Part shown: piece by piece, positions 1,461 through 52,110 of the stretch
Numbering within the stretch: position 1 is the stretch's first letter
Layout: each line of letters starts with the position of its first letter
Origin: Ramazzottius varieornatus
Taxonomy: Eukaryota > Animalia > Tardigrada
DNA length: 64,000 bases
NCBI GenBank assembly: GCA_001949185.1
Contig: BDGG01000007.1
Span: 747,802-811,801, forward strand
Direction: 5' to 3'
Position numbers and translations under genes: made by a program
The notes under the pieces: generated by a model
The model's input: the letters and a program-made list of their open reading frames with translations, nothing else
The model's database searches: none
Told to the model about the DNA's origin: nothing

Positions 1461-1610
1461 GTGTGAAAGTTTGGTTTTCTAACGCACGTTTCTGTCAAAT
1501 TGACAGATTTCACACTTGCGACTATTGTTCTAGTTTCTCATTGTATCTGTCGACACCTGACCAATTCTCGACACCGAAGACGGTGTCCGTGGAAAAAAAA
1601 GACTCGTCCT

Positions 1611-2660: not shown

Positions 2661-5600
2661 CTATTGTTCCAAACAGAGTTCATCCACGTTCAGAAGCCAC
2701 CAGTTCAAGTCTTCCACATGTTTTCGATGAAGAAATGTCCTGGACAGGAAGACTATGGTTCGATGAGTACTAGTGCAAATTCGGGTAGGAAAGGTCTTAC
2801 CAGGCAGCCGCAGTCAGAGTAACGATGATAAATGCGACCGTGCTAAGCGCTGCTATCAGATGATTATGATCTAAGAAACGCAGATAAGCTCTGTTTCATC
2901 TACCGATGGGTGGTACTTTTAGCCTCCTGGCAACCCATCCAACATTTTTTATGGATTCTTTTACGGCCATAGTTCTTAGTTCGCGAGGCGGGTGAACTTA
3001 GCCGTTTTAGAAAGTTAAGATCAGCTCTTGATCATCCCCCTACGTGGGAAAATCAACTGAAAGGATCTCTGATCCTCAGTATGTACGATCCTCCACACAG
3101 TTGTACGCGTGAACGCGCGCGCCGTCCCGAGTAGTAAGCACACGGCAGACCGGCCAATCAACGGTCAGCTATCAGTCAGTCGAGCATGAATGTGCAGTAT
3201 CACACACGGATGGCCCAGCGTGTCANNNNNNNNNNNNNNNNNNNNNNNNNNNNNNNNNNNNNNNNNNNNNNNNNNATTGATTACCTGATTATTACCCATG
3301 GCGCAAATCTGTTCGACTGATTGACAGCTGACCGTTGATTGACCGGTCTGCCGCGTGCTCACTACCCGGGACGGATTCGAGCGTACGACTGTGTGGAGGA
3401 TCGTACATACTGAGAATCAGAGATTCAATCAGTTGATCTCCCCCCTAGCGGGATGATGAAAAGCTGACCTTGACTTTCTAAAACGGCCAAGTTGACCCGC
3501 CTTGCGAACTAAGAACTATGGCAGTAAAAGAATCATAAAAAATATTGTATGGGTTGGCCAGGAGGCTAAAAGTACCACCCATCGGTAGATGAAACCAGGG
3601 CCGACGCGCCAGATATCGAATGCAGTGTTATTTTAATCATTATAATAGAAAATCGATTCTAATAATTAAAATCGTTATAATTGTGCGGGTTGGTGTTTGC
3701 GTGATTGATTGATTCATAATAGGAGACCGAATTTTAATTTTAATAATTGAAATTCGTTTGCGATAATTGATTTTACTTGCAGTCAGCTGATCACGCAGAC
3801 TTAACATTAGCACGTGACTTTTAATAATTTTAATTGCATAGTAAGATAACACTGATCGGATGGATCAAACTTCTGCTTATGGGACGTCATGGTGTCGAAA
3901 CATAAAGATACTTTGATTTGATTGTTGGGATGCGTTGTCACCACGATACTACACATCCACCATTAATCACAGCAGTAATTAGAAATCTATACAACGGTGC
4001 AAACTAGTTTATACAAGGTCTGAGGGCTGCTTGTGTTTACACTGATATTGGTTCAACAAACAAAGGCATTGGCCAACAAAGGCAAGACACAGCACTGCGA
4101 ATTATGCAGACTTTGATGTGTATCTAATGCTCACGTTCAGTCAACGCATGAATTCTAGCCGTGCCAAAATATCAAAGGAGAGGTGAGAATAACAATGCCA
4201 GGGCCATTTGTATGTAGTTGATGAACAGAAATGGGCAACCCACCAACGAACAACCGGTGCATATTAATAACCATCGAACGAAAATGTTTGACGTGATGAT
4301 ACGGACGTAAGCTTCTTCTAGCATACGTCGACTGGTCAGTATCCGGAACCAGCTTTGGGATTCTGAAAATAACTTTCTGACGAAATTGTTGTGGCACCAG
4401 TACAGTTTTGTGGCTCCCTGTGATTCATCAATCAAATATTTTTATGTTTCGACACCATGATCGTCCCATAAGCAAAAGTTCGATCCATTCGATATAGGGT
4501 GCGTCGGCCCTGGATGAAACAGAGCTTAGAAATGAAACGGTTTTGTGGAAGTTATCGGTCACGTTCGGGTGCACTTCGAGTAGCTTTGGCTTTTACCACT
4601 TGGATTTCTACATTTTTCCATGAATCCATCGAACCCGCAGAACGGCGTGTCCGATGGGAGAGTATCTGAGCTGAACCAGGAAAACGTCATAGTCTGATCA
4701 AGCTTCAGAGTGAGTCCCGGTAGTTCGAAAAGAACCTTCGGAATGAGAATGTGCATTTATTTGTGCTATGGGTATCAGTTGTAAGTTCCGGGTTGCGTCT
4801 AACCTCCCGTTCCTCCATGTCTGGTTGCCTCAAGCGCGTAACTATTAGGTCTAAAGTTCGTCTTCCCAGTGCGTCAATGTTGACAGTCCCAGACGGAACA
4901 TCGAATGTTCGGTTCAGGAATAGTGGTACTAACTTTCGGCCTCCAATTGGTAAGGGGCGTGTACCGTTTTGCGTTGATTCCCGAATTATCTGTTGTAAGA
5001 TAAAAGAGTATAATCTAGTCCTTCCGTAGTCCATGTCGAGCGGAACTGGCGCTCTTCATAGAAATCAAGCGGACGAGTACAGTCCGATCGCTCGAGATGC
5101 GTGAAATCTTCGGGTTGCAATTTAAGGCCTGCCAAACATTCTCCGTACATGCAGTGAAAGCATGCCAAGCTGAAGGCCAAAATTACACAACACATGCATT
5201 CACACCGTGCTTTGACTGGTGTAATCAACTAATCCAGCCGGAAGTCTCCGGTTGGTTGGGCATGGCGGGTAGTATAGTTAACTTCGACCAATTATCGTGC
5301 TTAGAAAACCGGAAAATCTTATACACATTTTGAGCGACCGGCCTATAGTCTTTTGCCTACCTGATCTACGATAAAGACTACGTCGTAAGCTGTCATTGGT
5401 ACCTGAACACTCTGGAAAATGGTCAACAACTGCACTTAGAAGTCAAAGAACGAACGAGGCTCGTACTATTTCTTTCACTAAGACGGGCTTCGATATGCCC
5501 ATCCGTTGTCTGCTTCGTTGAGCTACTTCAACTCCACGCTGCAGAGCGGACGCTGGGGGAGGCTTTGGCTCGAGGATAAGAAGGGACTTGAACGCAGTCA

Positions 5601-7245
5601 TAGCTACCTAGAGCAGGATCGTACCATCTTCGGAATTTTAGATCTTACCACTTAATCATCAAATACTTTCGAATTCTCAATTTAATATTGCGCGATACTA
5701 CGCAATATCCGTATTTTGAAATAAACGAACAACTCCACTTTTACCGTATCGTCGGACAAGTTGTAGTTCCAGCTCAGATAACCGTATACCGAAGTATCTC
5801 GTATCGGTTCCAGAGTGAAGTACACGTACTGACCATCGGTCATGTTCAAGGCAGAAGCTCTACAAAGAAATCATGTTGTCGAACTTTGACAAGCAGGATT
5901 TGGAATTGTATTAATCATCCTTTGATCATGTAAAATAGGCGACTGCCGTCCATTCCGAGCTTGCATCGCTTGACAGATTAAGGCACCCGTGCGGGCCAAT
6001 GGCTTCGTTTCGAGCTGTTTGAGACGAGAGCTGGACTCTGCACATGTCAGGCCTATCCTATGTTCTTTCCCGTAAACATAATTATCCGCTTCATCGGAAA
6101 CGACCCCGGTTAAAGTAGCCTCGAGAAAATCTTGACGAGAAAAACAGCAAGCTGAAATTCCAGGCGGTAAACGTGACCATGTATGTAGACGACACGAAGG
6201 TTTACTTTTACCTGATCAGTAGCTGCCGCAGGTCCGAGTTGATTCCGAAATACAAAAGAACTGCAGGAAAACAATTTGTCATTGTAGCTTACGAAAACCG
6301 CAGACCGAAGTGCACAATACCAGGGAAGGCCAGAACGGCTTACCGCGGCTCGATGAGTTGAACAACCGAAGGACCTCATCATGGTTTGGTTTCTCGGGCG
6401 TGATCTCGTTCACGTAGAGCTGGATCCACGGATTCTGCCTCATGTACTTGACAAACAAGACGGAGCAAAGTCTGTAGCGAGGAACCACCGCTTGCAGTCC
6501 GATCAAGACAAATATCTTGCTCCAGCCGTATTTCGCAAACAGAGATCTGTACAGCTCCGGATAGTTTGCGCAACCGAAATAAGTAGTGATCCAGGTTGAG
6601 CCGCGTTGTCTGTCAGCCAAAGTGGGAGCACCTTCTCCTGAACTATCAATACAAATTTCGAATGCAGCCATAAGCTTGTCCATGGATTTCAGTAGTGTTG
6701 TGTATTCGCTGCAGTTGTGTACCTGGTTGTAAATAGGATGTCCCAGTGACTTGCTAGATTCTCGACAAATGGAGCTTCATTGCAGTCTGCAAGTTACGAA
6801 ACGGTAAAAGACCAGGGACATTCTTTTTTTCGGAAATCTCCATACGTGGAACCAAGCTTGCACTGTCTCTGCCCCATGACAAAATATGAGGGCACTTACT
6901 CGGCCACACGAATATATTTGTGCTTGAACCATTGGAAGTAGCCTGCGTGTAATACCAGCGAGCCAAGAGGTACTGACTATCGTCGGCTACACTAGAGCAG
7001 TCGCCGGCACGGTCATCAGGCTGGAATATGTTGGTGTGGGTGTATCGAATTGAAGAGCGGTTATTCTGTTCTCGAAGATCATCCATCGCACAATCAAGAA
7101 ACGGTTCCACGACTGCACGAATAGGATTGCGCGAAGTGTTGGCGAAGCGTAGTGAGACGATGTTTACATCGATGTATGCGTTGACACAACGAATCATGAC
7201 AGATAACGAAAGCATCGCGCTAAAACACCTACGTTCAGAATTCAT
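2661..7245 (-). CDS. Multi-exon ANF-receptor/rGC-ectodomain single-pass receptor lacking kinase-homology and cyclase domains (subfamily A, copy 1)
   Basis: ATG 7245 signal peptide then YIDVNIVSLRFAN. Spliced exons read NCNEAPFVENLASHWDILF, LFAKYGWSKI, AFKSLLIL, AYDVVFI, FLNRTFDVPSGTVNIDALGRR, LPSDTPFCGFDG. TM exon 2871-2801 (LIAALSTVAFIIVTLTAAAW); last exon TFLHRKHVEDLNWWLLNVDELCLEQ* ends at 2661. GT-AG junctions were in phase where checked. Confidence 0.75.
3226..3275. other. Assembly gap (50 N)
   Basis: Run of N at the centre of a foldback element. Confidence 1.
3596..4512. mobile_element. hAT-like non-autonomous element
   Basis: TIRs CAGGGCCGACGC / GCGTCGGCCCTG, extended subterminal inverted repeat (3863-3920 vs 4430-4490), perfect 8-bp TSD GATGAAAC (3588-3595, 4513-4520). 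Confidence 0.9.
3623..3854. mobile_element. AT-rich hAT-like MITE nested in the left TIR of the previous element
   Basis: TIRs CAGTGTTATTTTA / TAAGATAACACTG (12/13 match); 8-bp TSD ATCGAATG / ATCGGATG (1 mismatch). Confidence 0.85.
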
Positions 7246-8849: not shown

Positions 8850-11750
8850 CTATAAGACGTCATCTGGCCACGCCTTGCTGAAAAGCTTTGCCTAGTGCCC
8901 ATATACATTGTATCCATGACACGGAGATACTCACCACACAGCGGTGATCGAAGTCAGGAGCAGGACTGCCGTAGAAGTACAAATTAATGTGACTGAGCCT
9001 GCAAAAGTCGACGAGGTTAGGCAGGTTTCGTACACGCACGACGAGATATTACGGGCCAGTAAAAAATTACGGGCCAGGCCTATTCGCTACGGCGGCACGG
9101 GCAGGTGACTCTTGCTCCAAGTAAAAAACACGTGGAAGGCTGGACTGCTGTACGTGCGTGCTGGATATTGGGCCGAAGAGCTAAAGCTTGTCATATTAAT
9201 GTTATAGCAGTCAGATCTTCATTATACCTTCAACAGTTCAAACTATTCCAAGGCTTCTCTGGTCTCCAGGGGAGAGTCCACAGCAGCATAGAAACGTTAG
9301 AGTAAAACAGCTGATCAGCTGATGGCCACTGTCCATGACAATTTTCTACGGTTGCATTTTACTTCGTTACGTCATTTGTGCGTTTTCTGTTTCTGACTTC
9401 CATACAAATTGTAAATTTGCTGTCTTTTTTCCCCTGGTCCGTAACTTTTACTGACCCGTAATATCTCGTCGTGCGTGTACTTATAAGACAGTAAAAATTA
9501 TGGGACAGGCGAAAAAGACGGTAGAATGGAAATTCAACCGTAGCAAAGTGTTGAAAAGTACATTAGTGTAAATCGGTTGTGGACGCACGTGCTTCCGTAC
9601 CGCCTTAGCGAGAAGGCCTGTGCCATAATTTTTACTGTTCCATAATTACCCATCATGCGTGGGCTTGATGTACAGAATTCACGAAGTAACGCTTTGCCTT
9701 ACTTTTCACTTGTCTACAAATGCCAGATATTCCATCGAACCCACAAAGCGGTGTGTCGGGAGGCAAGGTTTCAGACCCGTACCAAGAGAAGTTTCTTGTT
9801 TGGTGGAGGCGTAAGCTAAACCCAGGCTGTACAAAAAGCACCTGAAAAGCAGATGAAGTGGTAAGATTGACTCGATGTACAGTTTTCGGCAGACAAAGGA
9901 CGCCCTGTACAGTGCATACTCACTTCGCGCTCTTCCATGTTCGGTGAACGAAAACGAGTTACCACAAGGTCCAGTATTCGCCGACCCAATGGGTCAATGT
10001 TGACTGTTCCCGATGGAACATCGAAAGTTCGATTGAGAAACATCGGAACTAATCGGCGTCCTCCCTTTGCGAGCAGCAGGGTGCCGTTCTCTGTGGAGTT
10101 CCGTACGACCTACATTTTCGATAAGTTCATACAAATCGGTACAATTCTTAGAATTTTAGATCAAAAAATTACGCGCACGTACCTCATCGACGATGAACAA
10201 GGCATCGTACGCCGTCATAGGCACTTGGACATTCTGCAACGGGCGAGAAGTGATCAAGATGGCGAAGGACTAGGTTTAGAGGTGGAGCGTTTACTATTTC
10301 TTGTAGCAGAACAGGTTTCAATATCCCCATCCGTCGCCGGCTTCTCTCGACAACCCTTATACTGCGCTGAGAGGCCAAAGCTGAAGAAGCCTGTGGCTCT
10401 AGAATGAGCAGAGATCGAAAGGCTGTTCTGGCCATCTACAACCAAACGAACACACGCAGCCAAATTTGGCCGATAAAATTTTTTCCATTAAGGATAAAGA
10501 CGCGTCGAGCTCAGTGATTGATCATAAGTTCTTTGTTGTTTATTTTGTCATTTGTTGATGATAAGCTCATACCGTATCTTCAGCCAAGCTGTAGTTCCAA
10601 TTGAGGTACCCGTAAACTGAAGTATCTCGTATCGGCTCCATAGCGATGTACACACACCCGCCATTGGTCAGGTTAAGGACTGCCGCTCTGTGTTCAGATC
10701 AAAATTAGTAGGCTGGGAACACTCCTCCTCAATATGTATGACGTTCAGAAACAGGCACCCAGCTTCACTATAATAATTGATCTGTACCTGACCATTAAAC
10801 GACGTAAGTCTTGGTTCAATCCAAAAAACACAAGAACTGTAATTATACGAAATTTTATGCGGCTGTTGTCACACCCTGTATCCGCTGTAACATGAAGAAC
10901 TTACCGCGGCTTGATGAGTTAAATGATTCGAGAACTGTATCGTAGTTCACTTCCGGGTTTTGAATATCGTTGACGTAGAGCTGGATACGTGGAATCTGTT
11001 TCATGTGCCGGATAAACAGCAGTGCGCAGCCCCTGTAGCGTTGGAGCGACGCACTCGAACCAATCAACACGAATATTTTCCTCCATCCATATTTGGCAAA
11101 CACCGATCCGTAGAGTTCGGGGTAGTTTGCGCACCCGTAGTGAGTGGTAATCCAGGTTGATCCTCTCTTCCTGTCAGCAAGAGTCGGAGCACCTTCCCCA
11201 GAACTAAAATTACAGAAATTGCCTGTGCACGGAGAACATGAAGGTAAACACCAAAATCGAAAGTACGGACCTTGTTACGAAAAGTATGTCCCACTGTGTC
11301 GCCAAATTTTCGACAAAGGGAGCTTCTAGGCAATCTACAAAAACATTCGGGATGAGCTATCAGCTTTGCCAAAGTATATTAGGCCGAAAGCAATCGGTGC
11401 TTACTTGGCCAAAGGAAAATGTCTGTTGCCGTGCTCCTCGACATTCCGCGAGTGTAGTACCACCGAGAAATCAAATACTGGCTGTCGTCCGCAACGCTGG
11501 CGCAATCACCTGCCCTGTCGTTGGGCTGGAAGATGTTGGTGTGAGAGTACCGAATCAGCGACTGGTTGTTCCGCTCTCGCAAATAATCCATGGCACAGTC
11601 GAGCAAAGGCTCCACAATTGTCCGAATTGGATTACTCGAGGTATTGGCGAACCGAAGTGATACGATGTTTACTTCAATCAGGCGACTGTTGCAGACGGAA
11701 AAGGCGATGCGGATCGAAAGGGTAACAATATAAAACCTCATGAGCACCAT
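8850..11750 (-). CDS. Cyclase-less ANF-receptor-like single-pass receptor (subfamily A, copy 2)
   Basis: Paralog of 2661-7245 with the same exon layout: IEVNIVSLRFAN, CLEAPFVENLATQWDILF, FAKYGWRKI, AFRSLLIL, FLNRTFDVPSGTVNIDPLGRR, LPPDTPLCGFDG. TM exon about 8998-8935 (SVTLICTSTAVLLLTSITAV). The last exon is uncertain (CKAWPDDVL* at 8850, or a longer frame ending at 8624). Confidence 0.7.
9033..9477. mobile_element. MITE, TA TSD, CACGCAC-terminus family (intronic)
   Basis: About 45-bp TIRs CACGCACGACGAGATATTACGGG(C/T)CAGTAAAAA.TTACGG.CCAGG flanked by GTAC. A degenerate relative follows at about 9488-9640. Confidence 0.85.
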
Positions 11751-12081
11751 CTTTTCATCATTAAACTCAGGTCGACAGTTTTCTATCGGTTGACGTTTTC
11801 GATCAGTTTTCTTTCAATACCAAAATCCCCGGCTAACGTCACAAATTTCAGAAATGACTACACCTAAAAGGGAACAGATGCACATAATTCCTGAGACGGA
11901 TCCTATGCCCGCGAGCACGATGAAGCTTGTTGATTGGAGGGTAACCCGAAAGACGCGATAATCATTTCGTACAACTACTGATCGGGTACCGGGATATCAG
12001 GACCAGGATAGGCTCACAAGGGGTAGACGAGGTAGCGCGTCTCGGAATTCACATTGCCACAGCCCGTGTCCGTACCATCAC

Positions 12082-12493: not shown

Positions 12494-15042
12494 CCATTAC
12501 AACAGGCGATACCAGCTGCCCAAATTTTCTTTGAGTTGGGGGAGATGAGCGTGGCCGGACTTGCTGCTTATGGCAAGGTAGCCAAGGGTATTTTCTATCA
12601 CGCGAGAGAGGAAATATACGAAATTTGAGATGCGCTACCTCACCCTCTCCTTGTTAGCGAAGTCGTATGTCTAAATCGGATGGTAAGCTTCATACCGCCA
12701 TTGAAAAAAGACCGTAGTTTTGCTTTGAGCGACACAGTACACTTCTGAGATTCGAGCGCCGAATGTCTGGTAATTGCCTTTAATATCGAGGTCAACACAT
12801 GGACGGTATGTTTTCATTACTGGATAGACACGCAATGTCAATGTGAAAATTATTAGCGGCTACAAGAAAGCAGCTTGGCAGGTGAGCAACCGGGCACAAT
12901 GTGCCAAGCCTATCTCTTCCAGTATTCAGCTAGGAATACTAGACGGGCTGCAAATACTGGATCGCGGAAGAGGAGAGCAGAAGATACCACAGAACTGTTT
13001 CTTTTGCAACAAAGCAAAGTGTCTTTAAATTGTTGGCGCCCACACTTTCCATCCAATGAAAGTTGTCCGCGCTTAAACACTAGAAACCATTGCACGGTTC
13101 TGTCCGCCGCTAGTATCCGGTGCGGAAGTATGACTTCCAGCGTTTTCCTGAGCATCAATTTCAAAGAGTCATATCTCTCTTCCGGGACAAGCGTTTGCCT
13201 CCAAATCTATTGCAATGTGACGAATCATCATTCGGCTCTCGAATAAGCTGTTAGATAATCAAATTGACAATGAAATTGACTAGTCGTGCTGCAAAATCAA
13301 TTTGGCAAAACTGACCGATTTGTGGCAAACGTGGCACTCTCGGTAAAACAATTTTCCCAAACGTCCAGATTCTTTCGAAAATCCTGTTATGTGTTCATAT
13401 AATATAACGATAAACGTTCTTGCAAAAGCTCTATCAGGTTTTCTTCCAAAACTTTAGCTGCCAAAGTAATGCGGGTCGAAATTCGGACATGAAACAAAAA
13501 ACCAAGTTCTGCGTTTCAGGAGCTGGAAGATTTCCGCACCGGATCGACTTCGGCTGAACATAGAGCCCACCCTGTCGTATTTGCCGTGCAGCCCATCGAC
13601 AGCTTACAAGAAGTCCGTGAGGCAGGACGAACTTAACTCTCGCGATCCCGCCAGAGTGTCGCATTTTGCCGGTCATCATTGCAGTCGGTAAAACGGAAGT
13701 TGTTGCTTTCAGAATTCCAGAAGTGGCAGTGAGATAACTTCTGACTGTTATTATGAAGACTCGACTTTCTCTTAATGAACGGTAGGACTGGCTTCGAAAT
13801 CTGTTGAGCCAGGGCACGAAGAAACAATTCAGCAAAGCAGGAAAATCTTCCTCTTGCGGCTTTAAACTCAACGTTCTCTTCTTATTGTCAGCGCACGAAG
13901 CTAATCGTTGCTGCAGAAGAACGAAGAATGTTGGTGGACAATATTTGCCATGGGGAAGAACAGAGAGGACATAAGCCAAATTCACATAAAGTTTTTGAAA
14001 ATCATTGCCCGAAAAGTCACAAGTCATACTTCCGCACCTGATACAAAAACTACTCAAAGACGCAGCGTCCACTTGCGTGTAGTTACCCAAATGAAACCGA
14101 GACGCTGTGTTCACTTTTGTGGCACTATCCTAATCTCCTCTGAACGGGAGTTCGGCAGGCGAGCTCGCAGAACCGTGTTGTGTTCTGGTCAGTAAAAAAA
14201 AGCACAGCCTGGTAGATGTTTGAGCGGCATCAGCCTGTCGAAATCCAAATGCCTCCTATTGCAGATCACTTCGCCTGCGTGGCGCCGTCGGTACAGTCAG
14301 CTGGAAAGAACGGAAGTCACTTCGGCACAGAGCACTGAATTTCTCACTGGAAAAAAGGTCCTCCTCCCGCGTCGCAACAGCGATGATGATAACGAGTAGC
14401 ACCACGAACGAACTGATGATGGCAGTATGGCCTACAGGCGGTTCGAATTTGAAGAACGTTTCGCAGTGAAATAAGGTCATGGTTGTACTAGTGAATTTCT
14501 TACTCTTGGAATCTCGACACCGAGGTTGTCCCTGTTGGCTGAATAGAACCTTCAAAGCAAAATGGAAATCATCTATTGACCTTGTTTCCGCGAATCGCTC
14601 AGATGGTTCCGACCTCTTTCTCATTCATGTCTGGAAGTTGAAAGCGTCCTAGAATAAGATCCGAGGTTCGTCGACCGAGCGAGCCGATGTCGACTGCGTC
14701 GGATGGAACCACAAAGGTTCGGTTGAGAAATCTTGAGGCTAGCTTCCTTCCCCCATCGTTTAGTGATCACGTACCATTCGATGTGGCCTCGTTTACAACC
14801 TTTTAGAAAGACTACATATACCTCTTCGAAACTACATATACCACTGCCACTGCTCGTGTGCGTAGTGATAACGAATTTTCTACGTAGGTACATTCAGAAT
14901 ACCTGGTTACGTAAAGTATGTCCCATTGCGACGCAAAAAGTTCAATAAACGGTGCTTCCAGACCGTCTGCAGAGACCAGAAACCACAGTTATGTGAAGTC
15001 AACGTCAAGCCTGCTGCGCGGTATAGTCTAAAAGCTTACTGG

Positions 15043-15376
15043 GAGTCAAAAGTATATGAGTTGTGTTCGCTGAAGGCCGAGAGTAACACCACTGCGCAAG
15101 GTACTGGTTATCGTCTGCCACGCTAAGACAGTCACCGGGTCGTTAGTCCGGTTGAAAGATATTGGTGTAGGAGTATCAATATTGAATAGAGGAGTGCTTG
15201 TTTTCTTCCCGCAGATCGTCCATTGCGCAATCAAGTATTAGTTCCACAACTAAACGCATGGGACTACGAGACGCGTTGGCGAATCGCAAAGATACGATAT
15301 TCACATCGACATGAGCTTTCGCGAAACGAAAGTAAGTCACTAACCACGCGTTGTAACAAATCGAATTGAGAAACAT
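15043..15376 (-). pseudogene. Orphan, disabled exon 1 of a subfamily A receptor
   Basis: HVDVNIVSLRFANASRSPMRLVVELILDCAMDDLREEN..., then stop/frameshift, then YTNIFQPD*RPGDCLSVADD. No downstream exons recognised. Confidence 0.75.
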
Positions 15377-16242: not shown

Positions 16243-18752
16243 TCAGCTGTACCCAGTACCTAACCAACTTCGAGTGCGGGTAGAGTAGCACCTATCAGGT
16301 GAAGTTATGAGATCTTCAGTATCTAACTCCCATTGAGGTTCCCTTCTTCTTGAACTGCAGGAAGAAACGCCAAGGGCTTGTTTCCCGTCTGTACTCGTGA
16401 ATGCGACTGAGTGCTTTCTCAGATTACCTGGTAATGCGATGCATGGCTATCCCAGCTAGCACACCTATTACAAATAACGCGACAAGCACACCAAGGACGG
16501 TACTGATTAGGTTGCTGACGCGTCCCCCTTGACCTATACACAAGAAACATGTTAATTTACTTAAGATCAACTACTCCTTGTCAAAACAACCGTATTGAGA
16601 CATACAGCGAGGGTTATTGCCCAAGAATCCACAGAAAGGCTCGTTCGGTGGAGCTCCATCTGCAAGGCTTCGATGCCAATCGATTTTCCGACCAGCAACA
16701 GCGGTAAATATACCACGTGCTCCGTCGTATTGCAGGACCGGCTAGAGAAAGGCTTGGCTTAAAAATTTCATACGTCACTACGTATGTTGCGTATGTGCTC
16801 CAGTACCATGAAACATCCTTTTTCTGGATTGAAGTCTTTGACACAGAAATCGACCAGCAAAGTGTTGCCGTGATCTGTACGAAGTATCATGCCGTCCAGT
16901 GCGATATCTCGGTCTGCGAACACACTGGCTAGTGCTCTGCCGTCTGAGAGATTCATTGCAGCGTGGAAGGACTCGTTGAGGACCTAATTGGCCAAACACG
17001 GAATTTATAAGGTTGGAAGCTATTCGGTCAGCAAATGTAAGATGATGCACGCTTACGTATCCAACAGCTAGCACACTGTGGTACACAGACAGTGCAATGT
17101 GTGGCTACAACGTTACAAATTAGTATAGCGGAACTCAGCAAAGAGCATACCGTTCGGTATGTACTGTACAAGTGTACATGAAATTCTTACTTTTTCACTG
17201 GGCCAAAAGACCGCGTCATATTTGACGACGCTCTCATTTTTCAGGACATCCATCAGACGAAGATCTACGGCGGGCTTTTCAGAGGTGCAGTTCGGTGTCA
17301 GTTGCAGCAGAGTTTGCTGACTACCCTGAAAACGTTCGAGGGGCTTAATTTTGTATAACTGCTCCCCCCGGTCTGCGTAGTGGGAACTGCCTTTCGTCAC
17401 GCTACTTACGAGATGATCACTGAAGGACTGGTCGATGGAGCCATACCGTCGTTCGTTTTCGAATGGCTCTACCGCTATGAAGACCTATGGCAAAGTGAGA
17501 AAACTGGATACCTGTCCGCGTTGACCAAAAAATGCACGGTACTCACATATTCCCCGCCGTTCAGCCCTTGCTTACTAGCGGACGCCTGTTAGAAAGTGGT
17601 TACACTACGGGTTCGAGACCGGAGCTTAGTGGTGCATCGCGAGCCACTCACCATGAAGCGCCTGACCGTCTGTGCTGGCATCAAAAGAAGTATCACTGCA
17701 GGCAAACAGCTCATACATTACCCCGTTTAGTTCAAAGGAAGACATTTGAAATTTTAATGAACGGCCAAGTTTATTGTTCCGTTACCTCGGCAGGTCTTTT
17801 GGATTCGATCGAATAAAACGGCGTTGTTCAAGTCCTCGTCGTTGCTCAAATAGAAGAACGACATGCGCAATCCAGTGTAAAGATCCACATGGATGCGCTT
17901 CAACATGGCCTGAAGTCCAATGAAAGTGGGATGCTCCACGTGTACAACCGATACTGTAGTCCAAGAGTACAGTGTTAGTAGTGCAAAGGCTGCGCGGACA
18001 ATCTGGGGATAGCTATAAACGGAGAGTGATATGGTGGTGGAAAAGGGACCGGGTGCGCTGTTGGAAGATTTCACGAAACTCGGAGATGCCACTGCATTGT
18101 TCCAACCTCCACTGAAACAGGATATTGACCCCATGTACTCGGGACCAGCACGATCCGCAGGACACGTGGCTTATTGCATTTCTCGCAGAACGTAGCAAAA
18201 CTCACCTGCCTATCAGAAGAGTATTCCATTCTATAATTACCAAAGCTGATCAGATTGGACAGGACGAAGGTTTTTTACGATTTGTTCAGTAGGGTATGCC
18301 GGGGATGAATGACCCACCTGTACTCAGAGAGCTCAGCTGAAGGACTTCATCGCATCCTAAAAAGTCCAAGAATCTTAACAACGGCATTAATCTGGCGATA
18401 CTCGGTTCCACGTACCAATGTAGAAAAGCAGAAACAGAGAATCGGGCTTGCTCTTTGTGTAGTAAAATTCGGGTATGAGATATACGTAAGCTCCAATATC
18501 GTCACATCTACGAATGAGTGGACTGGTAATGACTGTTACGTCCACATGGAATCCGTACTTCGTCCGTAGATCCTCAAAGCCCATTGTGTACCCGGGAAGT
18601 ATGCTAGGCAGACCCGAGATCATCTCACGAGAAGGTAAGCCATAGATAACTGCTGTGATAACTAGTGTTGCAGAATCACAAAAGCCAAACCCAAATAGAA
18701 GGACAATAAATACAACTCGGTAGTCAGATTCACTAGACCAAAGGAGTTTCAT
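16243..18752 (-). CDS. Cyclase-less ANF-receptor-like single-pass receptor (subfamily B)
   Basis: Signal peptide, LVITAVIYG..LPSILPGY..G, LLTLYSWTTVSVV, DGRALASVFADRDIALDG, FDWKPCRWSSTERAF-overlapping juxtamembrane exon, TM LISTVLGVLVALFVIGVLAGIAM, last exon SSRRREPQWELDTEDLITSP...GTGYS*. Confidence 0.7.
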
Positions 18753-37820: not shown

Positions 37821-39004
37821 ATCGTTTTTGGAGAACCGACCGTTTCGTATTCTCTCATAACCTTCACAGCGAATGATCACCGGGCAGTTGTTCGACCGCC
37901 TGTGAGCGAGAAGGCCGCTCTTCGCAGCACCGTACGAACGCTTATCTTGACTAGCTTCCCTTGTTTCTTTTCGCCTGCGGTTTTCCCGTCGCTGCTTAAT
38001 TGGAGTTTCCCACACACTCATCCCAAGACTTAGATAAACTGTTTTGGCCTAGTTTTTCATTTTTCTTACTCGGCCTGTTCCGAAAAAGGCTCGTAAATGT
38101 AGGCCCGAATCGTTGTTACTGGCACTCTCTTTCGTGGTTTTATGCCACTGGTTTCGCAATAAACTTGGATAAATTTCTCTTTCATCACAAAATACTTCGC
38201 AGAGTTAGTCTTCTTTGACCAAGTTCGGGTACTGGCAGCTCAATGGGGCTGAATATCAATCAATTAACGGAGTGTCTATGCACCGTTAATACCTTGAACT
38301 GACCTTCAACACTGGTTGATACAGTATATGCACAATAATAGGGGGACTGGACCCTGGTTTTTAAACACGCGTAGCGTGTTGCTGACGTTAGCAACGTGAT
38401 TACATTCGAACTTTGTGCGATTAGTTGACCCATTGCTTGCACGACCCGTGTTGGGTGGAAGGGAAGTGCGAGATGTCGTCTGTTGTAGCTGAAGTTCGAA
38501 TACTCGGAATACTTATTTTTAAAAAAACGATTGTCTATGCGCCGTTAGTCCTTCTATTGACATTCGACTCTACACAGGACAGATCTAAAGTTCTTGCACC
38601 GACTCTCAACTGTCGTAGTACTCTGTAAGAACCTTGAGCTAATCGTGGGTGTGGACCGGACCCGTGGGTTCTTGTCCCAGAGGCCGGGCGGTGCGTTTCG
38701 GCGTACCGCCTGTAGTTCAGAGCAGAAAGCGCAAGCAGTTTTCGTATTTTCGTACTGTAGTTTGAGTGTTTGCGATGTCGACACCGCTGACATCGCAGTA
38801 CCGGTTGATCAATCATCCCATAGCAATGTTCTAGTCGGGCTCTATGACGAATCAACTGTGTTGGTCATGGCTTTGTTGGTGATGACTTTATTGGTGACGA
38901 CGCATACAATGTACGGCAAAAAAGACACCAGAAAGAATGGGCGTTGGTTGGTACCAGCTTGTTCAAGCCAGTCGAATTTGAGAACTTGACTGATTCGGAT
39001 GATG

Positions 39005-46400: not shown

Positions 46401-46789
46401 GTTGCTTGCTTGATCTTTAAGTATGTAAATTTTTCCCAGACTGAATACCACACTGTATTTAACAAGGCTGAAAAATCGAAGCCGGAATCACTCCTTTTCG
46501 GGCATACCAGGAGGAGCACTCGTATCAATGTTGAAGAGTTCCGTGAAGCGAGCGACCAATACTGAATTAGTCTTCAAAGTACCGGATGCAGATGTGAAAA
46601 TTTCCCTGAAATCAGTTTACCGTTGACCACAGAACGGTGGCCCTTCTCTTAACTTGTCTGTTGCTCCACCAACACCCCGCGGGATCATTGTGACTATGCA
46701 CTCGGTGAGGTAACCCGCTGCTGATCTGTCCGTACTGTTTTGGTGTTAAGTAGGTTGCCTAACTTTGCGCTGACCGTCGACAGGAAGTA

Positions 46790-48456
46790 CACTGAGCTCC
46801 ATGATTATCTGTCCACCCCCATTTTTGTTCAAAAATTCACAACTTATTTTGCACTAACCCGATTTCGATATTTTGAACGTCTCTTCAGAGATCAGTGTTT
46901 GATCTTTACGACGACGTGACTCCCGTATGAATCAATCAGCAATTCAACTGGCAGTATCATCCCTACGAACACCTAAAACTGCCTTGTTTTCGGCTCCGAG
47001 CTGCGAGTGCTAGCCCGCAGATAGCACGTCATGCTTGTTACTGTTATGTAACCCCAACATCAAGCTTTCAAGTTAGCCCATGTGAGAAAATTTTGCAGAT
47101 ATGCAGAAACAGCTGTGTTGTCGTGTCAACCAGGAAGTATTCTCGGTTATTTTCGGTGGTGCATATTCAAGACGCCTTGTCTTGGACATTCTTGCTGCCA
47201 AGTTACGTTCAAACGGTGAAACTTTTCATAAAGATAATNNNNNNNNNNNNNNNNNNNNNNNNNNNNNNNNNNNNNNNNNNNNNNNNNNNNNNNNNNNNNN
47301 NNNNNNNNNNNNNNNNNNNNNNNNNNNNNNNNNNNNNNNNNNNNNNNNNNNNNNNNNNNNNNNNNNNNNNNNNNNNNNNNNNNNNNNNNNNNNNNNNNNN
47401 NNNNNNNNNNNNNNNNNNNNNNNNNNNNNNNNNNNNNNNNNNNNNNNNNNNNNNNNNNNNNNNNNNNNNNNNNNNNNNNNNNNNNNNNNNNNNNNNNNNN
47501 NNNNNNNNNNNNNNNNNNNNNNNNNNNNNNNNNNNNNNNNNNNNNNNNNNNNNNNNNNNNNNNNNNNNNNNNNNNNNNNNNNNNNNNNNNNNNNNNNNNN
47601 NNNNNNNNNNNNNNNNNNNNNNNNNNNNNNNNNNNNNNNNNNNNNNNNNNNNNNNNNNNNNNNNNNNNNNNNNNNNNNNNNNNNNNNNNNNNNNNNNNNN
47701 NNNNNNNNNNNNNNNNNNNNNNNNNNNNNNNNNNNNNNNNNNNNNNNNNNNNNNNNNNNNNNNNNNNNNNNNNNNNNNNNNNNNNNNNNNNNNNNNNNNN
47801 NNNNNNNNNNNNNNNNNNNNNNNNNNNNNNNNNNNNNNNNNNNNNNNNNNNNNNNNNNNNNNNNNNNNNNNNNNNNNNNNNNNNNNNNNNNNNNNNNNNN
47901 NNNNNNNNNNNNNNNNNNNNNNNNNNNNNNNNNNNNNNNNNNNNNNNNNNNNNNNNNNNNNNNNNNNNNNNNNNNNNNNNNNNNNNNNNNNNNNNNNNNN
48001 NNNNNNNNNNNNNNNNNNNNNNNNNNNNNNNNNNNNNNNNNNNNNNNNNNNNNNNNNNNNNNNNNNNNNNNNNNNNNNNNNNNNNNNNNNNNNNNNNNNN
48101 NNNNNNNNNNNNNNNNNNNNNNNNNNNNNNNNNNNNNNNNNNNNNCCGCAGAGTTTCAAAAGTTTCTCACATGGGCTTACTTGAAAGCTTAATGTTGGGG
48201 CTATATAATAGTAACAAGCATGATGTGCTATCTGCTGGCTAGCACCCGCAACTCGGAGCCGAAAAAAGGCAGGTGTTGGTAGGGATGATACTGCCAGTTG
48301 ATTTGCTGATTGTTTTGTACGGAAGTCACGTCGTCGTAAAGGTCAAACACTAATCTCTAAAAAGACGTTCAAAATATTGAAATCGGGTTAGTGCGAAATA
48401 AGTTATAAAGTTTTGAAACGAAGATGGGGGTGGACAGATAAATATAGGACTCAGTG
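46790..48456. mobile_element. Tc1/mariner-like element with about 300-bp TIRs spanning the N gap
   Basis: TA-CACTGAG.TCC..TTATCTGTCCACCCCCAT... / ...ATGGGGGTGGACAGATAA..GGACTCAGTG-TA; inverted homology 46790-47100 vs 48146-48456. Confidence 0.85.
47239..48145. other. Assembly gap (about 907 N)
   Basis: Run of N; the X-filled ORFs here are artefacts. Confidence 1.
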
Positions 48457-48527
48457 TAAGCTAATGGTAACACTACAATATGCCCGATTTGTTTGAGCAC
48501 GTACTTCGCCCTGCCTTCTCAACGAGG

Positions 48528-48684
48528 GTACACGTACTTTGCCCAGTTATGGCATGGACAATATTATGAGCACCGGCCGAAGTGGTCGCACTTCGAGTGA
48601 TTAACTGGTTTTGGCTGAGCACTGCCGCTTTCGGCCGATGCCCAAAAAATTTTCCATGCCCATAATTAGGGAAAGTACGTGTAC
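48528..48684. mobile_element. Short MITE related to the CACG/TA family
   Basis: GTACACGTACTTTGCCCAGTTATGG.CATGG ... CCATGCCCATAATTAGGGAAAGTACGTGTAC. Confidence 0.65.
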
Positions 48685-49112
48685 AGGTAATCAGCGATGC
48701 CAGATACGGCTAGAATTCTGTGATCCTGATTTTGCAGTCAATTACGGAGCGCCTGACGGTTTCATATTACCCCATGACCCATTCGGGGCGAGTAACTGGT
48801 ATAATGACAAATTACGCAGACTAGTCATTGGGTAGTATGAAGCCGTCCGCCAGCCTATAACTGACTGTAAAAAAGATCACAGAAGTGTAGCCGTATCCGG
48901 CGTCGCTGTAGGTAATGACATGTTTCCAATTACATGTGTTCGACTGTGGAGGGCAGGACCAGGCGGCTTCTTTGTGCTTGAAGACTCGAAACCTTGGCAG
49001 CTCAGCCGAGAAAAAATTCTTTCTACTAGATGTTCCATGGTGCCTGATCAAGACAGACATGTTCCCTACGCTGTAACCGCTGTGTTCTTCAGTGTGTGCA
49101 GCCTGAAATAAG

Positions 49113-52110
49113 ATGTCTGCCACCCACGTTCTGCTATCCGCGTGGTCAGTAGCTTTTATCACATTGTTATCACTCGACGGCACAGCCACAGAGTCGAGGT
49201 CGCAGTTTTCAAGACTGAACATCACAGTGGGGATTTACGGTATTAGTGAACCATATATTCTTTCCTCGTTGCCGTACGTCCTGCCAGGATTTCTGGGTGG
49301 GCTAGACTACATCGGGCCTCGATATAACTTCCAAATCAGCGCCACCGTCCTCTCTGGGCGCCATACCGTCATGGTCCGAGATTGTATCGAGCTGGCGCAA
49401 TACCTGTATTTGGTGCCACAGTTTTACTACAGCAGACCGAGAGATGGTTCCCTCTTCCTGTTATTGCACACCGGATGTAACGAAATCTATGACCTTTCCG
49501 CAATGAGTTTAGGTAGGTCTCAAGCGTCTTTCTCACCTACACTTCTTTAAATACCCCAACTCTCAGCTCGAAGCACACCAAATTTTTAGAATGGAACACT
49601 CTGGTTCTCAGCAGGTAAGCCTGACTTCGTTGTAAAAGCTGCAGAGGCTTTCTCCACCCGACACTCGTGTGCTAATGTTGAGCCTTACGTGTGATTCCTG
49701 CAGTGCAGGACCGAACACCTCCGGCCTGAGTTCCCTGCTGAGACTGTTCCACAACCTGATATCGTCGTCTGTGGTCGACTTCACGCAGATGATCATAGTG
49801 CTGCAAGAACTGCTAAGATACTTCTCGTGGTCAACAATAGCGATTGTAAGGGACAAAGATACGCTTTATTATTCTCTCGTGGACGTAATGACGTCGCTCA
49901 ACGAGAACGCAAAAGACAAACTGACCATTACGGTCTACAATCTGCACAACATTACGAGCATGAACGACGGACTGCTCTTAACAGAAATCAAGAACCATGC
50001 AAGAAGTAAGATTGATGCGTCTGACACGCACTCTGATGCAAGCTCTAGGAACAGTACACGTGCACAACAGAACACTGCGGCGGTGTCAGAGTGAAGCAAT
50101 ACCACCATTGATACTACCTCTAGTGTATTCACTGCAATACAGGCTTTTGTGCAGGGACGTTGGTACACTGGTGAATTTCATGCTAACAATCAAACGTGAA
50201 GTAACACGCTGATTTTCAATGCAGTAGTATTGTTCACTCTGCTACGAGCGTTAGTGAGTGGGGCGGCGTTTTCGTACATCTCCTTCAGTCAGGGATCAGA
50301 CCGTTGTTCGGTCATTCTGATATTATGGTGATGTACATCTGGAGGACTAGTAATGAATAGGTGCACGCACCGGAGCTAAATGTGGGCATGGACAAAACTG
50401 TGGGTCATGGAGCGAAAGCGGCGCTGCTCTAATTGATTTAATTGATTGGTCGGCTTCAGCTGACCCGTGCCGCTTTCGCTCCGAGGCCCACAGTTTTGTC
50501 CATGCCCACATTTAGGCCAGGTGCCTGTACAGGCTGTGTTACTAGGATCGGAAACCAGATAATGCCCGATGCTTACAGTTATCCTTCTGCTAATGAATGC
50601 CGCAACAGTTCGCGGCTTCCTGGTAAGCCATATGGTATGAAGTATTCGTGGCCCACTTTAAGTCTGACTTGTTTCCTTATTACATATAGAGCAAAGCACA
50701 CAACGCTTCTATGACAAACGGAGAATACGCAAGTACCCTAACTATTTGATGCCCCAAGTACACCAACGTCACCTGTTCGACCCAAGTCCTGACTGATATT
50801 TCGGTCCACAATACTGCACAAAGCGCTTGGGTGATGAAACTAGATAACAGCCAATAAACCGCTCGAAACTTAGGTCGGGCTGTTGTGGCGTTGTTTTGAT
50901 GTCAATGTATCTGCCAAGTGTAAAATTTTGACTACTAATAAGTAGGTGTATATATTCATGGAACCATACTACAACGAAAGACGATACGGAAAACTAGCCT
51001 GGAACATAAATCAAGCCGATGACCTGGTAAGTTCAATGGTACTGTAACTTACATGATAGTTCAGTTGACGACCACGCGGTGTTACAGGACGTGAAAGAAG
51101 GCTTTCGGTCGCTGCTTTTTGTCACATCCACGTGTCATGGAAGGCACACAGGCAACAAAGCACTGATGAATAAGTTCAAGAACGAGAGCATCGTGAATTA
51201 CGGCGGAGTATACTGGGAACGTGAGGAAGTAAGGTTACTCGTAGCACTCGACCGTACCAGATTAAACGGAAGATTTCATACTCCAATAATTTTCGCGCTC
51301 TTTCGCAGCCCATCAATGCGTTCTTCATGTACAAGCTGGTGAAGTTAGTAGGGCAAATTCTGGACGGGGCTTTACAAGCTGGCATGAACGTTCATGACGG
51401 GTACAGCGTTGCCGACCTGTTTCGCGAACGCACGTTCACGGTGGAGCGAAGTCCCATGAGGACGGACAAATATAACAGAGTATTGTTCGATTACTGCGTC
51501 AAAGACTTCAATTTCGAGCATGGAACATGGAATACGGTCTGTGGTCGTTGTGTCCGAGTATCGCGGAAGGATTAGTCGTATGTTGATCTCCTTACAGAAC
51601 GTCCTAAGCTATGACGCAAAAGAACAGCGGATTTTTTCTGTGAACGGGACAATAATCGACTGGAACAATGCAGAGAATCGTCCTCCAGTTAACGAGCCAT
51701 ACTGTGGTTTTGCCGAAACTCGTCCGGTTTGCGAGTGTAAGTCTCGGCGTTTACACCAGATAGACTGAGTTGGTATATCTTATGGCATTTCCGATCCCTT
51801 TTTAGACAACCGGTTAAAGTTCTCGCTAGCATCGAGTGCGTGGCACTGGACATTAGGTGTGCTTGTGCTGTTAATTATAGTTGCAGCCGCGGTCTTGCGC
51901 TATCGACATTTGGCCCCAAGGTGATCGCCGTTGCTTACGAGTTCGTTTCCAGACACACCGTAGTCTGTGCACACCCTCTGCATAGTATAGACCATCCCAG
52001 TTTTTCAACAATCCCAATTTTTCAGACAATCGGAAGGACTGTGGTGGTTAGCTACCATCGAATATTCCGACATTCACGAAGTGAAACTTGGACGATCAAG
52101 CTCGTTTTAG
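49113..52110 (+). CDS. Cyclase-less ANF-receptor-like single-pass receptor (subfamily B)
   Basis: Signal peptide, RLNITVGIYG..LPYVLPGFLGG, EWNTLVLS micro-exon, LLRYFSWSTIAIV, GFRSLLFV, DGYSVADLFRERTF, RPPVNEPYCGFAE, TM WTLGVLVLLIIVAAAVL, last exon QSEGLWWLATIEYSDIHEVKLGRSSSF*. Confidence 0.78.
50361..50530. mobile_element. Intronic hairpin MITE related to the CACGCAC family
   Basis: CTAAATGTGGGCATGGACAAAACTGTGGG and its exact reverse complement, within termini GTGCACGCACC / GGTGCCTGTAC. Confidence 0.75.

What the first reader, a model, noticed from the sequence alone, without database searches (positions are those of the whole stretch)
2661..52110. Expanded cluster of 'cyclase-less' receptor-guanylyl-cyclase-like receptors truncated at the start of the kinase-homology domain
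Seen: five apparently intact multi-exon genes (2661-7245, 8850-11750, 16243-18752, 31681-34034, 49113-52110) plus two pseudogenes. Each intact gene has a signal peptide, an ANF-type ectodomain, one TM and a short tail (about 25-45 aa where the last exon is clear), and most show a clear PxxPxCGFxG juxtamembrane motif. Four tails come from a separate phase-2 last exon and carry a conserved W motif before the stop: LNWWLLNVDEL, PQWELDTEDL, GSWWLITI, GLWWLATI. Established: W-x-I/L-xxx-E/D-L is the juxtamembrane entry to the kinase-homology domain of rGCs, and NPR-C is the vertebrate precedent for a cyclase-less receptor. Inference: an old truncation (shared by two very divergent subfamilies) was amplified into a diversifying family of decoy, clearance or co-receptors. 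These may heterodimerise with full rGCs or act as a novel chemosensory/peptide-sensing repertoire. None of this is visible in the ORF track.
Basis: partly seen in the sequence, partly recalled or inferred. Interest (0 to 1): 0.85.

Follow-up and report, generated by a model that had tools for sequence, protein, structure and literature searches.

The report
Cyclase-less guanylyl-cyclase-type receptors in a tardigrade
This stretch of the tardigrade Ramazzottius varieornatus genome carries five intact and two decayed copies of a receptor that has kept the hormone-binding outer half and membrane anchor of a guanylyl-cyclase receptor but lost the whole enzyme half; the copies belong to a very large tardigrade gene family that has been noticed in print but never studied.

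Summary
My spliced models give five intact genes of 11-13 exons (493-532 aa). Each has an N-terminal hydrophobic leader, an NPR-type ANF ectodomain, the PxxPxCGF hinge, one TM helix and a 9-42 aa tail with a W motif. Two copies are pseudogenes. The 64 kb holds no kinase-homology or cyclase exon.

The last exon matches the juxtamembrane exon of full-length tardigrade cyclases, in the same phase, so truncation at the kinase-homology entry is supported. The paralogues are saturated at synonymous sites but conserved in protein, so the genes are under selection.

The window is 100% identical to R. varieornatus scaffold BDGG01000007.1. The family is already recorded: orthogroup OG0000104 has 276 tardigrade members, 208 with ANF and only 6 with a cyclase domain, and was "not otherwise distinguished" (PMC5531438).

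On the ectodomain tree short and full-length forms are interspersed, and AU tests reject one origin.

Function is inferred. The most likely role is as decoys or partner subunits of the few cyclase-bearing receptors.

Verdict: new members of a known but uncharacterised kind; moderate interest.

The parts
2661..7245 (-). Gene A1, 11 exons, 512 aa: leader, ANF ectodomain, hinge motif, TM, 26-aa tail with the NWW..DEL motif
   Evidence: Exons 7245-6900, 6786-6723, 6642-6344, 6260-6212, 5859-5745, 5607-5467, 5411-5361, 4989-4804, 4735-4597 (hinge), 2870-2801 (TM, phase 1 in, 2 out), 2739-2661 (tail, phase 2).. The profile score is 270 bits. Intron 9 (1726 nt) holds the gap 3226-3275 and a foldback repeat.
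8850..11750 (-). Gene A2, 11 exons, 493 aa; the same plan as A1, with a 9-aa tail that ends with a W..DDVL motif
   Evidence: Exons 11750-11405, 11334-11271, 11203-10905, 10836-10788, 10687-10573, 10435-10295, 10233-10183, 10109-9924, 9841-9703, 8998-8935 (TM), 8877-8850 (tail).. It is 65% identical to A1 in protein; ectodomain pN is 0.18 against pS 0.78.
14611..15358 (-). Pseudogene A3 (subfamily A relic)
   Evidence: Only exon 1-, 2- and 8-like pieces remain (tblastn). There are in-frame stops in the exon-1-like and exon-8-like pieces.
16243..18752 (-). Gene B1, 13 exons, 532 aa; 41-aa tail with the QWELD..EDL motif
   Evidence: Exons 18752-18416, 18356-18318, 18230-18206, 18111-17786, 17695-17652, 17585-17547, 17484-17410, 17325-17191 (start ambiguous, alternatively 17343), 17104-17057, 16983-16807, 16741-16606, 16533-16428 (TM), 16354-16243 (tail).. 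The profile score is 300 bits.
31681..34034 (+). Gene B2, 11 exons, 530 aa; 42-aa tail with the SWWL motif
   Evidence: Exons 31681-32068, 32133-32157 (25-nt microexon), 32237-32538, 32612-32655, 32726-32764 (followed by a GC-AG intron), 32865-32945, 33011-33151, 33222-33449, 33510-33651 (hinge), 33734-33821 (TM), 33920-34034 (tail).. The profile score is 331 bits. The hinge exon hits NPR-A 389-438.
36425..37842 (+). Pseudogene B3, a recent partial copy of B4
   Evidence: DNA is 90% identical to 49210-50011, introns included. It has 12- and 19-nt deletions in exon 1 and a stop at the codon matching B4 residue 236. Exons 7-8, the TM exon and the tail exon are absent.
49113..52110 (+). Gene B4, 11 exons, 532 aa; 35-aa tail with the LWWL motif
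   Evidence: Exons 49113-49512, 49590-49614, 49704-50005, 50579-50622, 50690-50728 (GC-AG intron follows), 50946-51026, 51088-51228, 51309-51536, 51598-51736 (hinge), 51806-51920 (TM), 52026-52110 (tail).. The public R. varieornatus model spans 49113-51575 (432 aa, ANF only). That equals exons 1-8 plus 12 codons of intron read-through.
2893..3595 (.). Foldback inverted repeat around assembly gap 3226-3275, inside A1 intron 9
   Evidence: The arms are 2893-3186 and 3310-3595, 87-95% complementary.
46788..48458 (.). Foldback inverted repeat around assembly gap 47239-48145, intergenic
   Evidence: The arms are 46788-47104 and 48148-48458, 81-90% complementary.

Best explanation
These are tandemly duplicated tardigrade genes for type I membrane proteins derived from receptor guanylyl cyclases (rGCs). 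Each keeps the dimeric natriuretic-peptide-receptor-type ligand-binding ectodomain, the rGC juxtamembrane hinge (PxxPxCGF plus a second Cys), the TM helix and the first intracellular exon with its W motif. The reading frame stops in that exon, so there is no kinase-homology domain, no dimerisation helix and no cyclase.

Shown: the architecture, the exon homology with full-length cyclases, the absence of catalytic exons nearby, long-term purifying selection, and membership of a tardigrade-wide expansion.

Inferred: they bind extracellular ligands and, having no output domain of their own, act through or against the few cyclase-bearing relatives. They could do this by sequestering ligand, as NPR-C clearance does, or by forming heterodimers that tune cGMP output. 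The short form seems to have arisen repeatedly by ending the gene after the W-motif exon. Read-through of that exon's donor in full-length genes would stop within 7-9 codons.
For: - Models and features.
- NPR-A match of window exons.
- Relatives are ANF_receptor proteins: 57 of 64, of which 18 also carry Guanylate_cyc.
- Fold of a relative: AF2 pLDDT 83, best Foldseek hits NPR-A at E 9e-26 and NPR-C at TM 0.80.
- No kinase-homology or cyclase exon in 64 kb.
- The neighbours downstream of each gene are other genes.
- The exon plan and phases are the same as in Paramacrobiotus full-length cyclases and H. exemplaris short genes.
- H. exemplaris short genes are followed by trypsin and deaminase genes, with no catalytic exons within 10 kb.
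- Ectodomain pN is 0.18-0.23 against saturated pS of 0.75-0.78.
- A W lies 4-35 aa after the TM in 24 of 28 short and 16 of 16 full-length relatives.
- Family size and the 208:6 ANF-to-cyclase ratio: PMC5531438 S2 Data.
- NPR-C both clears ligand and inhibits NPR-A/B by heterodimerising: PMC10334801 abstract.
- Genes annotated as ANP receptors were the majority of the 20 hormone-receptor genes expressed only in day-3 H. exemplaris eggs: PMC6925440.
Against: - There are no transcript data for these loci.
- No canonical AATAAA lies within 400 nt of any stop.
- The one public model seen (B4) ends earlier, by intron-8 read-through, and predicts a TM-less product.
- Ligand, partner and dimerisation are untested.
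- A2's tail is only 9 aa, and tails vary apart from the W motif, so any tail-borne signalling is doubtful.
- The recurrent-truncation inference rests on a quick tree of very divergent ectodomains, on AU tests under LG+G4 with groups named after the tree was seen, and on other species' gene predictions.
Confidence: 0.6

Rival explanations
1. The main products are secreted, TM-less ANF-domain proteins. These would be soluble binding proteins made by retaining the intron before the hinge exon, as in the public R. varieornatus model of B4.
For: The public annotation gives a 432-aa ANF-only product at 49113-51575. That equals exons 1-8 plus 12 read-through codons.
Against: The hinge, TM and tail exons downstream are conserved between paralogues whose synonymous sites are saturated. 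For B2/B4 the TM plus tail has pN 0.34 against pS 0.78, and the hinge motif is intact in all five genes. Other public models in R. varieornatus (P0089, P0090) and H. exemplaris include the TM and tail. A missed 61-nt intron is an ordinary prediction error.
Confidence: 0.1
2. The genes are 5' halves of ordinary full-length receptor cyclases. Their kinase and cyclase exons would lie elsewhere, beyond neighbouring genes or beyond the window, or the stops would be bypassed.
For: Only 2.6 kb of sequence is available downstream of A1. No polyadenylation hexamer was found after the stops.
Against: - No kinase-homology or cyclase similarity appears anywhere in the 64 kb, using 14 full-length query tails.
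- A2, B1 and B2 are followed within 1-2.4 kb by the next family member.
- B4 is followed by a convergent GH3 gene.
- Every last exon has an in-frame stop and no strong donor before it.
- The same short plan is seen in H. exemplaris, with unrelated downstream genes.
Confidence: 0.04
3. The genes are non-functional debris of partial tandem duplication of a cyclase gene's 5' half and are drifting neutrally.
For: Two copies in the cluster are plainly dead. Partial duplication is a plausible origin.
Against: Five copies keep 11-13 exons open with canonical splice sites, including a shared 25-nt microexon and a shared GC-AG intron. Non-synonymous divergence is a quarter to a third of a saturated synonymous divergence.
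Confidence: 0.04
4. They are autonomous receptors that signal through the short tail, as NPR-C is reported to do through Gi, and need no cyclase partner.
For: The NPR-C precedent. The W motif is kept in most short forms.
Against: Tails are short (9-42 aa) and, apart from the W motif, not conserved between subfamilies. The W motif is equally present in full-length cyclases, so it is more likely a membrane-interface or juxtamembrane structural element.
Confidence: 0.12

Closest known systems
Tardigrade ANF-domain expansion (orthogroup OG0000104 of Yoshida et al. 2017, PMC5531438; e.g. H. exemplaris BV898_06014 and BV898_12143, R. varieornatus RvY_14767 and RvY_13341)
   Same: The organism group, ectodomain type, hinge motif, single TM, short W-motif tail and exon plan (39-, 25-, 44-, 39-, 81-, 51- and 177-nt exons; TM exon entered in phase 1 and left in phase 2; last exon in phase 2) all match.
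   Different: Nothing essential differs; the window genes are further members. Identity to the sampled relatives is only 25-45%. Orthogroup membership itself was not looked up.
Full-length receptor guanylyl cyclases (mammalian NPR-A/GC-A; Paramacrobiotus metropolitanus 'atrial natriuretic peptide receptor 1-like' XP_055339285.1)
   Same: The ANF ectodomain, the PxxPxCGF hinge, the TM, the juxtamembrane W motif and, for the tardigrade ones, the same intron positions up to the W-motif exon.
   Different: The window genes have no kinase-homology domain, no coiled-coil and no cyclase domain. They therefore cannot make cGMP themselves.
Vertebrate NPR-C (NPR3), the natriuretic peptide clearance receptor
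   Same: The architecture matches: ANF ectodomain, one TM and a tail of a few tens of residues. NPR-C is also a good structural match to a modelled relative (1jdn, TM 0.80). Some H. exemplaris members are auto-named 'Atrial natriuretic peptide receptor 3'.
   Different: This is an independent origin. The window genes nest among tardigrade cyclases. They keep the cyclase-type hinge segment; the window-only profile of that region hit NPR-A but no NPR-C chain at E up to 1. They are amplified into a large family instead of being a single gene.
Plant receptor-like proteins (RLPs) relative to receptor-like kinases (analogy recalled from general knowledge, not tested)
   Same: Both are an ectodomain plus TM plus short tail, derived from enzyme-linked receptors, amplified in tandem clusters, and dependent on enzyme-bearing partners.
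   Different: The fold, the enzyme and the kingdom are unrelated. Partner dependence is unproven here.

Membership tests
Receptor guanylyl cyclase (rGC) | Extracellular ANF/PBP1-type ligand-binding domain | tested here: met
   The spliced alignment to the tardigrade ectodomain profile scores 246-331 bits. 57 of 64 relatives match PF01094. A modelled relative best matches NPR-A and NPR-C. Single window exons alone gave no Pfam hit.
Receptor guanylyl cyclase (rGC) | Juxtamembrane hinge motif PxxPxCGF with a following Cys | tested here: met
   It is present in all five genes. The window-only profile hits NPR-A residues 389-434 at E 7.8e-9.
Receptor guanylyl cyclase (rGC) | Kinase-homology domain | tested here: not met
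   The frame stops 5-30 residues after the W motif. No tblastn hit to 14 intracellular regions was found in the window; the best E is 0.19.
Receptor guanylyl cyclase (rGC) | Guanylate cyclase catalytic domain (PF00211) | tested here: not met
   full-length relatives match the window only with their ectodomains.
NPR-C-type clearance receptor | ANF ectodomain, one TM and a short cytoplasmic tail without an enzyme domain | tested here: met
   tails are 9-42 aa.
NPR-C-type clearance receptor | Common descent with vertebrate NPR3 | tested here: not met
   The window genes sit inside a clade of tardigrade cyclases and short forms. No NPR-C chain was hit by the hinge-region profile. NPR-C itself was not in the tree, so this is indirect.
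NPR-C-type clearance receptor | Binding and internalisation of natriuretic-type peptides; Gi-activating tail segment | not testable with these tools
   This needs binding, trafficking and signalling assays.
Tardigrade ANF-only expansion (OG0000104) | Encoded in a tardigrade genome | tested here: met
   The window is identical (0 mismatches over 21,725 nt) to R. varieornatus BDGG01000007.1.
Tardigrade ANF-only expansion (OG0000104) | ANF domain without a cyclase domain, with the same exon plan as annotated members | tested here: met
   The Pfam counts of the orthogroup are 208 ANF against 6 cyclase.
Tardigrade ANF-only expansion (OG0000104) | Listed in that orthogroup | not tested
   The member lists of the orthogroup were not available in the text held.

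The most novel reading that the evidence does not exclude
Tardigrades have repeatedly cut receptor guanylyl cyclases at the same exon, the juxtamembrane W-motif exon. They amplified the products into a repertoire of a few hundred enzyme-less ligand-binding subunits. These would pair with a handful of cyclase-bearing receptors, giving an animal counterpart of the plant RLP/RLK system and possibly a major chemosensory or peptide-sensing system of the phylum.
Probability: 0.2. Interest if true: 0.75.

Novelty: new member of a known kind. Interest (0 to 1): 0.45.

Why it matters
Tardigrade genome papers recorded this expansion as a "receptor ligand binding domain" family or as "guanylate cyclases" and left it unexplained. 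Hashimoto 2016 (PMC5034306) called its relation to tardigrade physiology elusive. Yoshida 2017 (PMC5531438) called it "not otherwise distinguished".

This analysis shows that the members are cyclase receptors cut at one defined exon. They keep the signalling hinge and the juxtamembrane motif, and they are under selection. That gives the family a concrete, testable identity as enzyme-less subunits or decoys of cGMP receptors. It also points to a mis-annotated 3' end in at least one public model. If the partner model holds, it would change how sensory and hormonal cGMP signalling in this phylum is understood.

Tried and rejected
- Pfam on single exon-sized ORFs found no ANF hit at E up to 0.1; the exons are too short and divergent.
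- The exon-1 ORF of B4 against PDB sequences found nothing.
- Two exact-product look-ups of the DUF2807 ORF, meant to find the source contig, found nothing on record.
- Word-indexed protein searches with H. exemplaris P0003 and with a 28-sequence alignment returned only 3 hits each. They gave no census of the family. The one gain was a short Paramacrobiotus member, P0116.
- The AU test under the site-mixture model did not finish in two 300-s runs. It was replaced by LG+G4.
- Pairwise dN/dS could not be given as a ratio because synonymous sites are saturated. Raw proportions are reported instead.
- The search for polyadenylation hexamers was uninformative.
- The first-pass profile alignment misplaced B4's last exon and one B2 junction. 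These were corrected by paralogue-guided alignment and by reading the sequence.
- One B1 acceptor (17325 or 17343) remains ambiguous.
- Left out: the joined (spliced) protein models have no reference, so they were never sent to Pfam, PDB, protein-database or structure-prediction tools. They were built only inside scripts, from window.fa, for local alignment, substitution counts and the tree. Database evidence for the window comes from exon-by-exon references and from relatives.
- The window is tardigrade, not human.

Full report
**Where the window comes from**

The window is eukaryotic and tardigrade. The 627-aa GH3 ORF at 52276-54159(-) is 100% identical to Ramazzottius varieornatus RvY_12140. 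The fetched scaffold piece of BDGG01000007.1 (GCA_001949185.1) matches window 42276-64000 with 0 mismatches in 21,725 nt. It is not human sequence.

An all-against-all comparison of open frames shows two groups of related exons.
- Subfamily A lies on the minus strand: 2661-7497, 8850-11813, and a relic at 14602-15379.
- Subfamily B comprises 16574-18761(-), 31531-33713(+), 36374-37264(+) and 49107-51765(+).

To turn these into gene models I took the following steps.
- I built an ectodomain profile from 48 database relatives.
- I wrote a codon-level spliced aligner with GT/GC-AG introns in all three phases.
- I checked the junctions with paralogue-guided alignments and by reading the sequence.

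| Gene | Span (strand) | Exons | Length | Tail |
|---|---|---|---|---|
| A1 | 2661-7245 (-) | 11 | 512 aa | 26 aa |
| A2 | 8850-11750 (-) | 11 | 493 aa | 9 aa |
| B1 | 16243-18752 (-) | 13 | 532 aa | 41 aa |
| B2 | 31681-34034 (+) | 11 | 530 aa | 42 aa |
| B4 | 49113-52110 (+) | 11 | 532 aa | 35 aa |

All five are open throughout and score 246-331 bits against the profile. Each has a hydrophobic N-terminal leader, 4-9 N-glycosylation sequons, the PxxPxCGF motif at residues 448-454 and one hydrophobic TM segment about 20 residues later.

In every gene the TM exon is entered in phase 1 and left in phase 2. A separate last exon carries the W motif.

Two copies are dead.
- A3 keeps only exon 1-, 2- and 8-like pieces and has in-frame stops.
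- B3 is a recent partial copy of B4, about 90% identical in DNA with introns included. It has 12- and 19-nt deletions in exon 1 and a stop codon, and it lacks exons 7-8, the TM exon and the tail exon.

**The assembly gaps**

Gap 3226-3275 lies in A1's intron 9 (1726 nt, against 704 nt in A2), between the hinge exon and the TM exon. No coding sequence is interrupted, and the phases match across it. Gap 47239-48145 is intergenic.

Both gaps sit at the centre of long inverted repeats with arms on both sides. That explains why the assembly broke there. It also argues that the flanks belong to one element. Continuity of A1 across the gap is still an inference.

**What the genes are**

Single exons are too short for Pfam. 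The membrane-proximal exon of B2, however, matches NPR-A residues 389-438. A profile built only from window exons matches the same NPR-A segment at E 7.8e-9, and matches no NPR-C chain.

A profile search of 1.84 billion representatives found 110 relatives. Of the 64 longer ones, 57 match ANF_receptor, 23 a kinase domain and 18 Guanylate_cyc.

Those looked up are almost all tardigrade.
- Many are 430-560-aa "Receptor ligand binding region" proteins of Hypsibius exemplaris and R. varieornatus.
- Others are about 1000-aa "atrial natriuretic peptide receptor 1-like" proteins of Paramacrobiotus metropolitanus.

An AlphaFold model of one short H. exemplaris member (pLDDT 83) best matches the NPR-A hormone-binding domain (E 9e-26) and NPR-C (TM 0.80). 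GABA-B and glutamate receptors come well behind.

**Is the enzyme half really absent?**

Full-length relatives hit the window only with their ectodomains. Fourteen intracellular regions give no hit better than E 0.19.

Each gene is followed closely by another gene: A2 by A1, B1 by A3, B2 by B3, and B4 by a convergent GH3 gene. The last exons contain in-frame stops and no strong donor site.

In H. exemplaris two short members are followed by a trypsin gene and a deaminase gene, with no catalytic exons within 10 kb.

**Where the truncation lies**

Exon maps of two Paramacrobiotus full-length genes and two H. exemplaris short genes show the same plan as the window genes.
- They share the 39-, 25-, 44-, 39-, 81-, 51- and 177-nt exons.
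- The TM exon runs from phase 1 to phase 2.
- The next exon starts in phase 2 and carries the W motif.

In the full-length genes that exon ends 17-35 residues after the WW, and kinase-homology exons follow. In all the short genes it is the last exon. If its donor in the full-length genes were read through, the frame would stop after 7-9 codons. That suggests an easy route to the short form.

The W motif is present in 16 of 16 full-length and 24 of 28 short relatives.

**Are they functional?**

A1/A2 (65% identical in protein) and B2/B4 (58%) are saturated at synonymous sites (pS 0.75-0.78). Non-synonymous divergence in the ectodomain is only 0.18-0.23. The TM plus tail is looser but still below pS. 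Splice sites, a 25-nt microexon and a GC-AG intron are also conserved. This is long-term purifying selection, not decay.

There is no direct expression evidence for these loci. In H. exemplaris, genes annotated as ANP receptors were the majority of the 20 hormone-receptor genes expressed only in day-3 eggs (PMC6925440).

**One truncation or several?**

On a 54-sequence ectodomain tree, short and full-length forms are interspersed. Subfamily A lies in a well-supported clade of 19 rows, 17 of them short. Subfamily B groups weakly with two H. exemplaris short genes and three Paramacrobiotus full-length genes. Well-supported branches force at least 6 changes of state.

AU tests under LG+G4 give two results.
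- They reject all short forms as one clade (log-likelihood difference 297, p 3e-139).
- They reject A plus B held apart from the full-length forms (difference 55, p 0.004).

Caveats apply. It is a quick tree with long branches. The groups were named after seeing the tree. It relies on other species' gene predictions. Exchange of ectodomain exons between genes would mimic recurrence.

Within each subfamily the short state probably predates the Ramazzottius-Hypsibius split. A single truncation shared by A and B is not supported.

**What was already known**

Hashimoto et al. 2016 noted an expansion of "guanylate cyclases" in this genome and called its meaning elusive (PMC5034306).

Yoshida et al. 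2017 list orthogroup OG0000104 with 284 members, 276 of them tardigrade. It has 208 ANF_receptor hits, only 6 Guanylate_cyc hits and 4 kinase (PK_Tyr_Ser-Thr) hits, and is "not otherwise distinguished". They also list further tardigrade-only ANF clusters (PMC5531438 S2 Data).

B4 has a public model of 432 aa with ANF only. It equals my exons 1-8 plus 12 codons of read-through and omits the conserved hinge, TM and tail exons. This is probably a missed 61-nt intron, or possibly a real secreted isoform.

I found no paper that describes the truncation point, the retained hinge and W motif, or the function.

**How it most likely works**

Shown: these are membrane-anchored NPR-type ligand-binding domains with an rGC hinge and no output domain.

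Inferred: they bind ligand, and they either sequester it or heterodimerise with the few cyclase-bearing relatives to modulate cGMP. NPR-C does both in vertebrates (PMC10334801).

Retention of the hinge and of the juxtamembrane W motif favours a role in a transmembrane dimer over a pure sink. That argument rests on conservation alone.

The joined spliced proteins have no reference. They were never sent to Pfam, PDB, protein-database or structure tools. They were used only inside scripts.

Noticed in passing
window 52276-54717 (-) and 58695-61435 (-): Two tandem GH3 beta-glucosidase genes (RvY_12140 and RvY_12142, 84% identical to each other). Their nearest non-tardigrade relatives are Acidobacteriota BglX proteins at 55-62% identity. 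Several further copies exist in R. varieornatus and H. exemplaris. This looks like an old bacterial acquisition that was then amplified. Each gene is split into two overlapping frames, so it probably has an intron.
   Followed up: partly
window 1500-2336 (+): An ORF with a hydrophobic leader and a DUF2807 / GIN 'auto-transporter adhesin head' domain (E 4.7e-28), a domain mostly known from bacteria. It lies convergent to gene A1. Exact-product look-ups from two candidate ATGs found nothing.
   Followed up: partly
window 2893-3595 and 46788-48458: Both assembly gaps lie at the apex of foldback inverted repeats with arms of about 300 nt (81-95% complementary). These are possibly foldback or MITE-like elements and the likely cause of the assembly breaks.
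   Followed up: partly
window 49113-51575 (+): The public R. varieornatus gene model for B4 (432 aa) stops by reading into the 61-nt intron after exon 8. It omits the conserved hinge, TM and tail exons. This is a probable annotation error or a secreted isoform.
   Followed up: yes
window 32765 and 50729 (intron starts); 32133-32157, 49590-49614, 18206-18230: B2 and B4 share a GC-AG intron (donor GCAAGT) at the same position. All B genes, and H. exemplaris P0004, share a 25-nt microexon that encodes the EWN motif; Paramacrobiotus P0040 has a 19-nt exon at the same place.
   Followed up: partly
window 55810-56748 (-) and 57494-58333 (-): A reverse-transcriptase fragment and a SAP-domain ORF lie between the two GH3 copies. 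They are probably retroelement remains.
   Followed up: no
window 7543-7803 / 37671-38048; 13414-13603 / 45380-45620; 20524-20769 / 41806-42051; 25030-25419 / 44238-44537: Pairs of dispersed repeats with weak protein-level similarity (45-62%) lie between the receptor genes. Their nature is unknown.
   Followed up: no
window 26000-30000: A region of high GC skew (0.13-0.17) and AT skew (up to 0.19) with no long ORF. The only tandem repeat is a 12-nt unit in 4.3 copies at 28969-29020.
   Followed up: no
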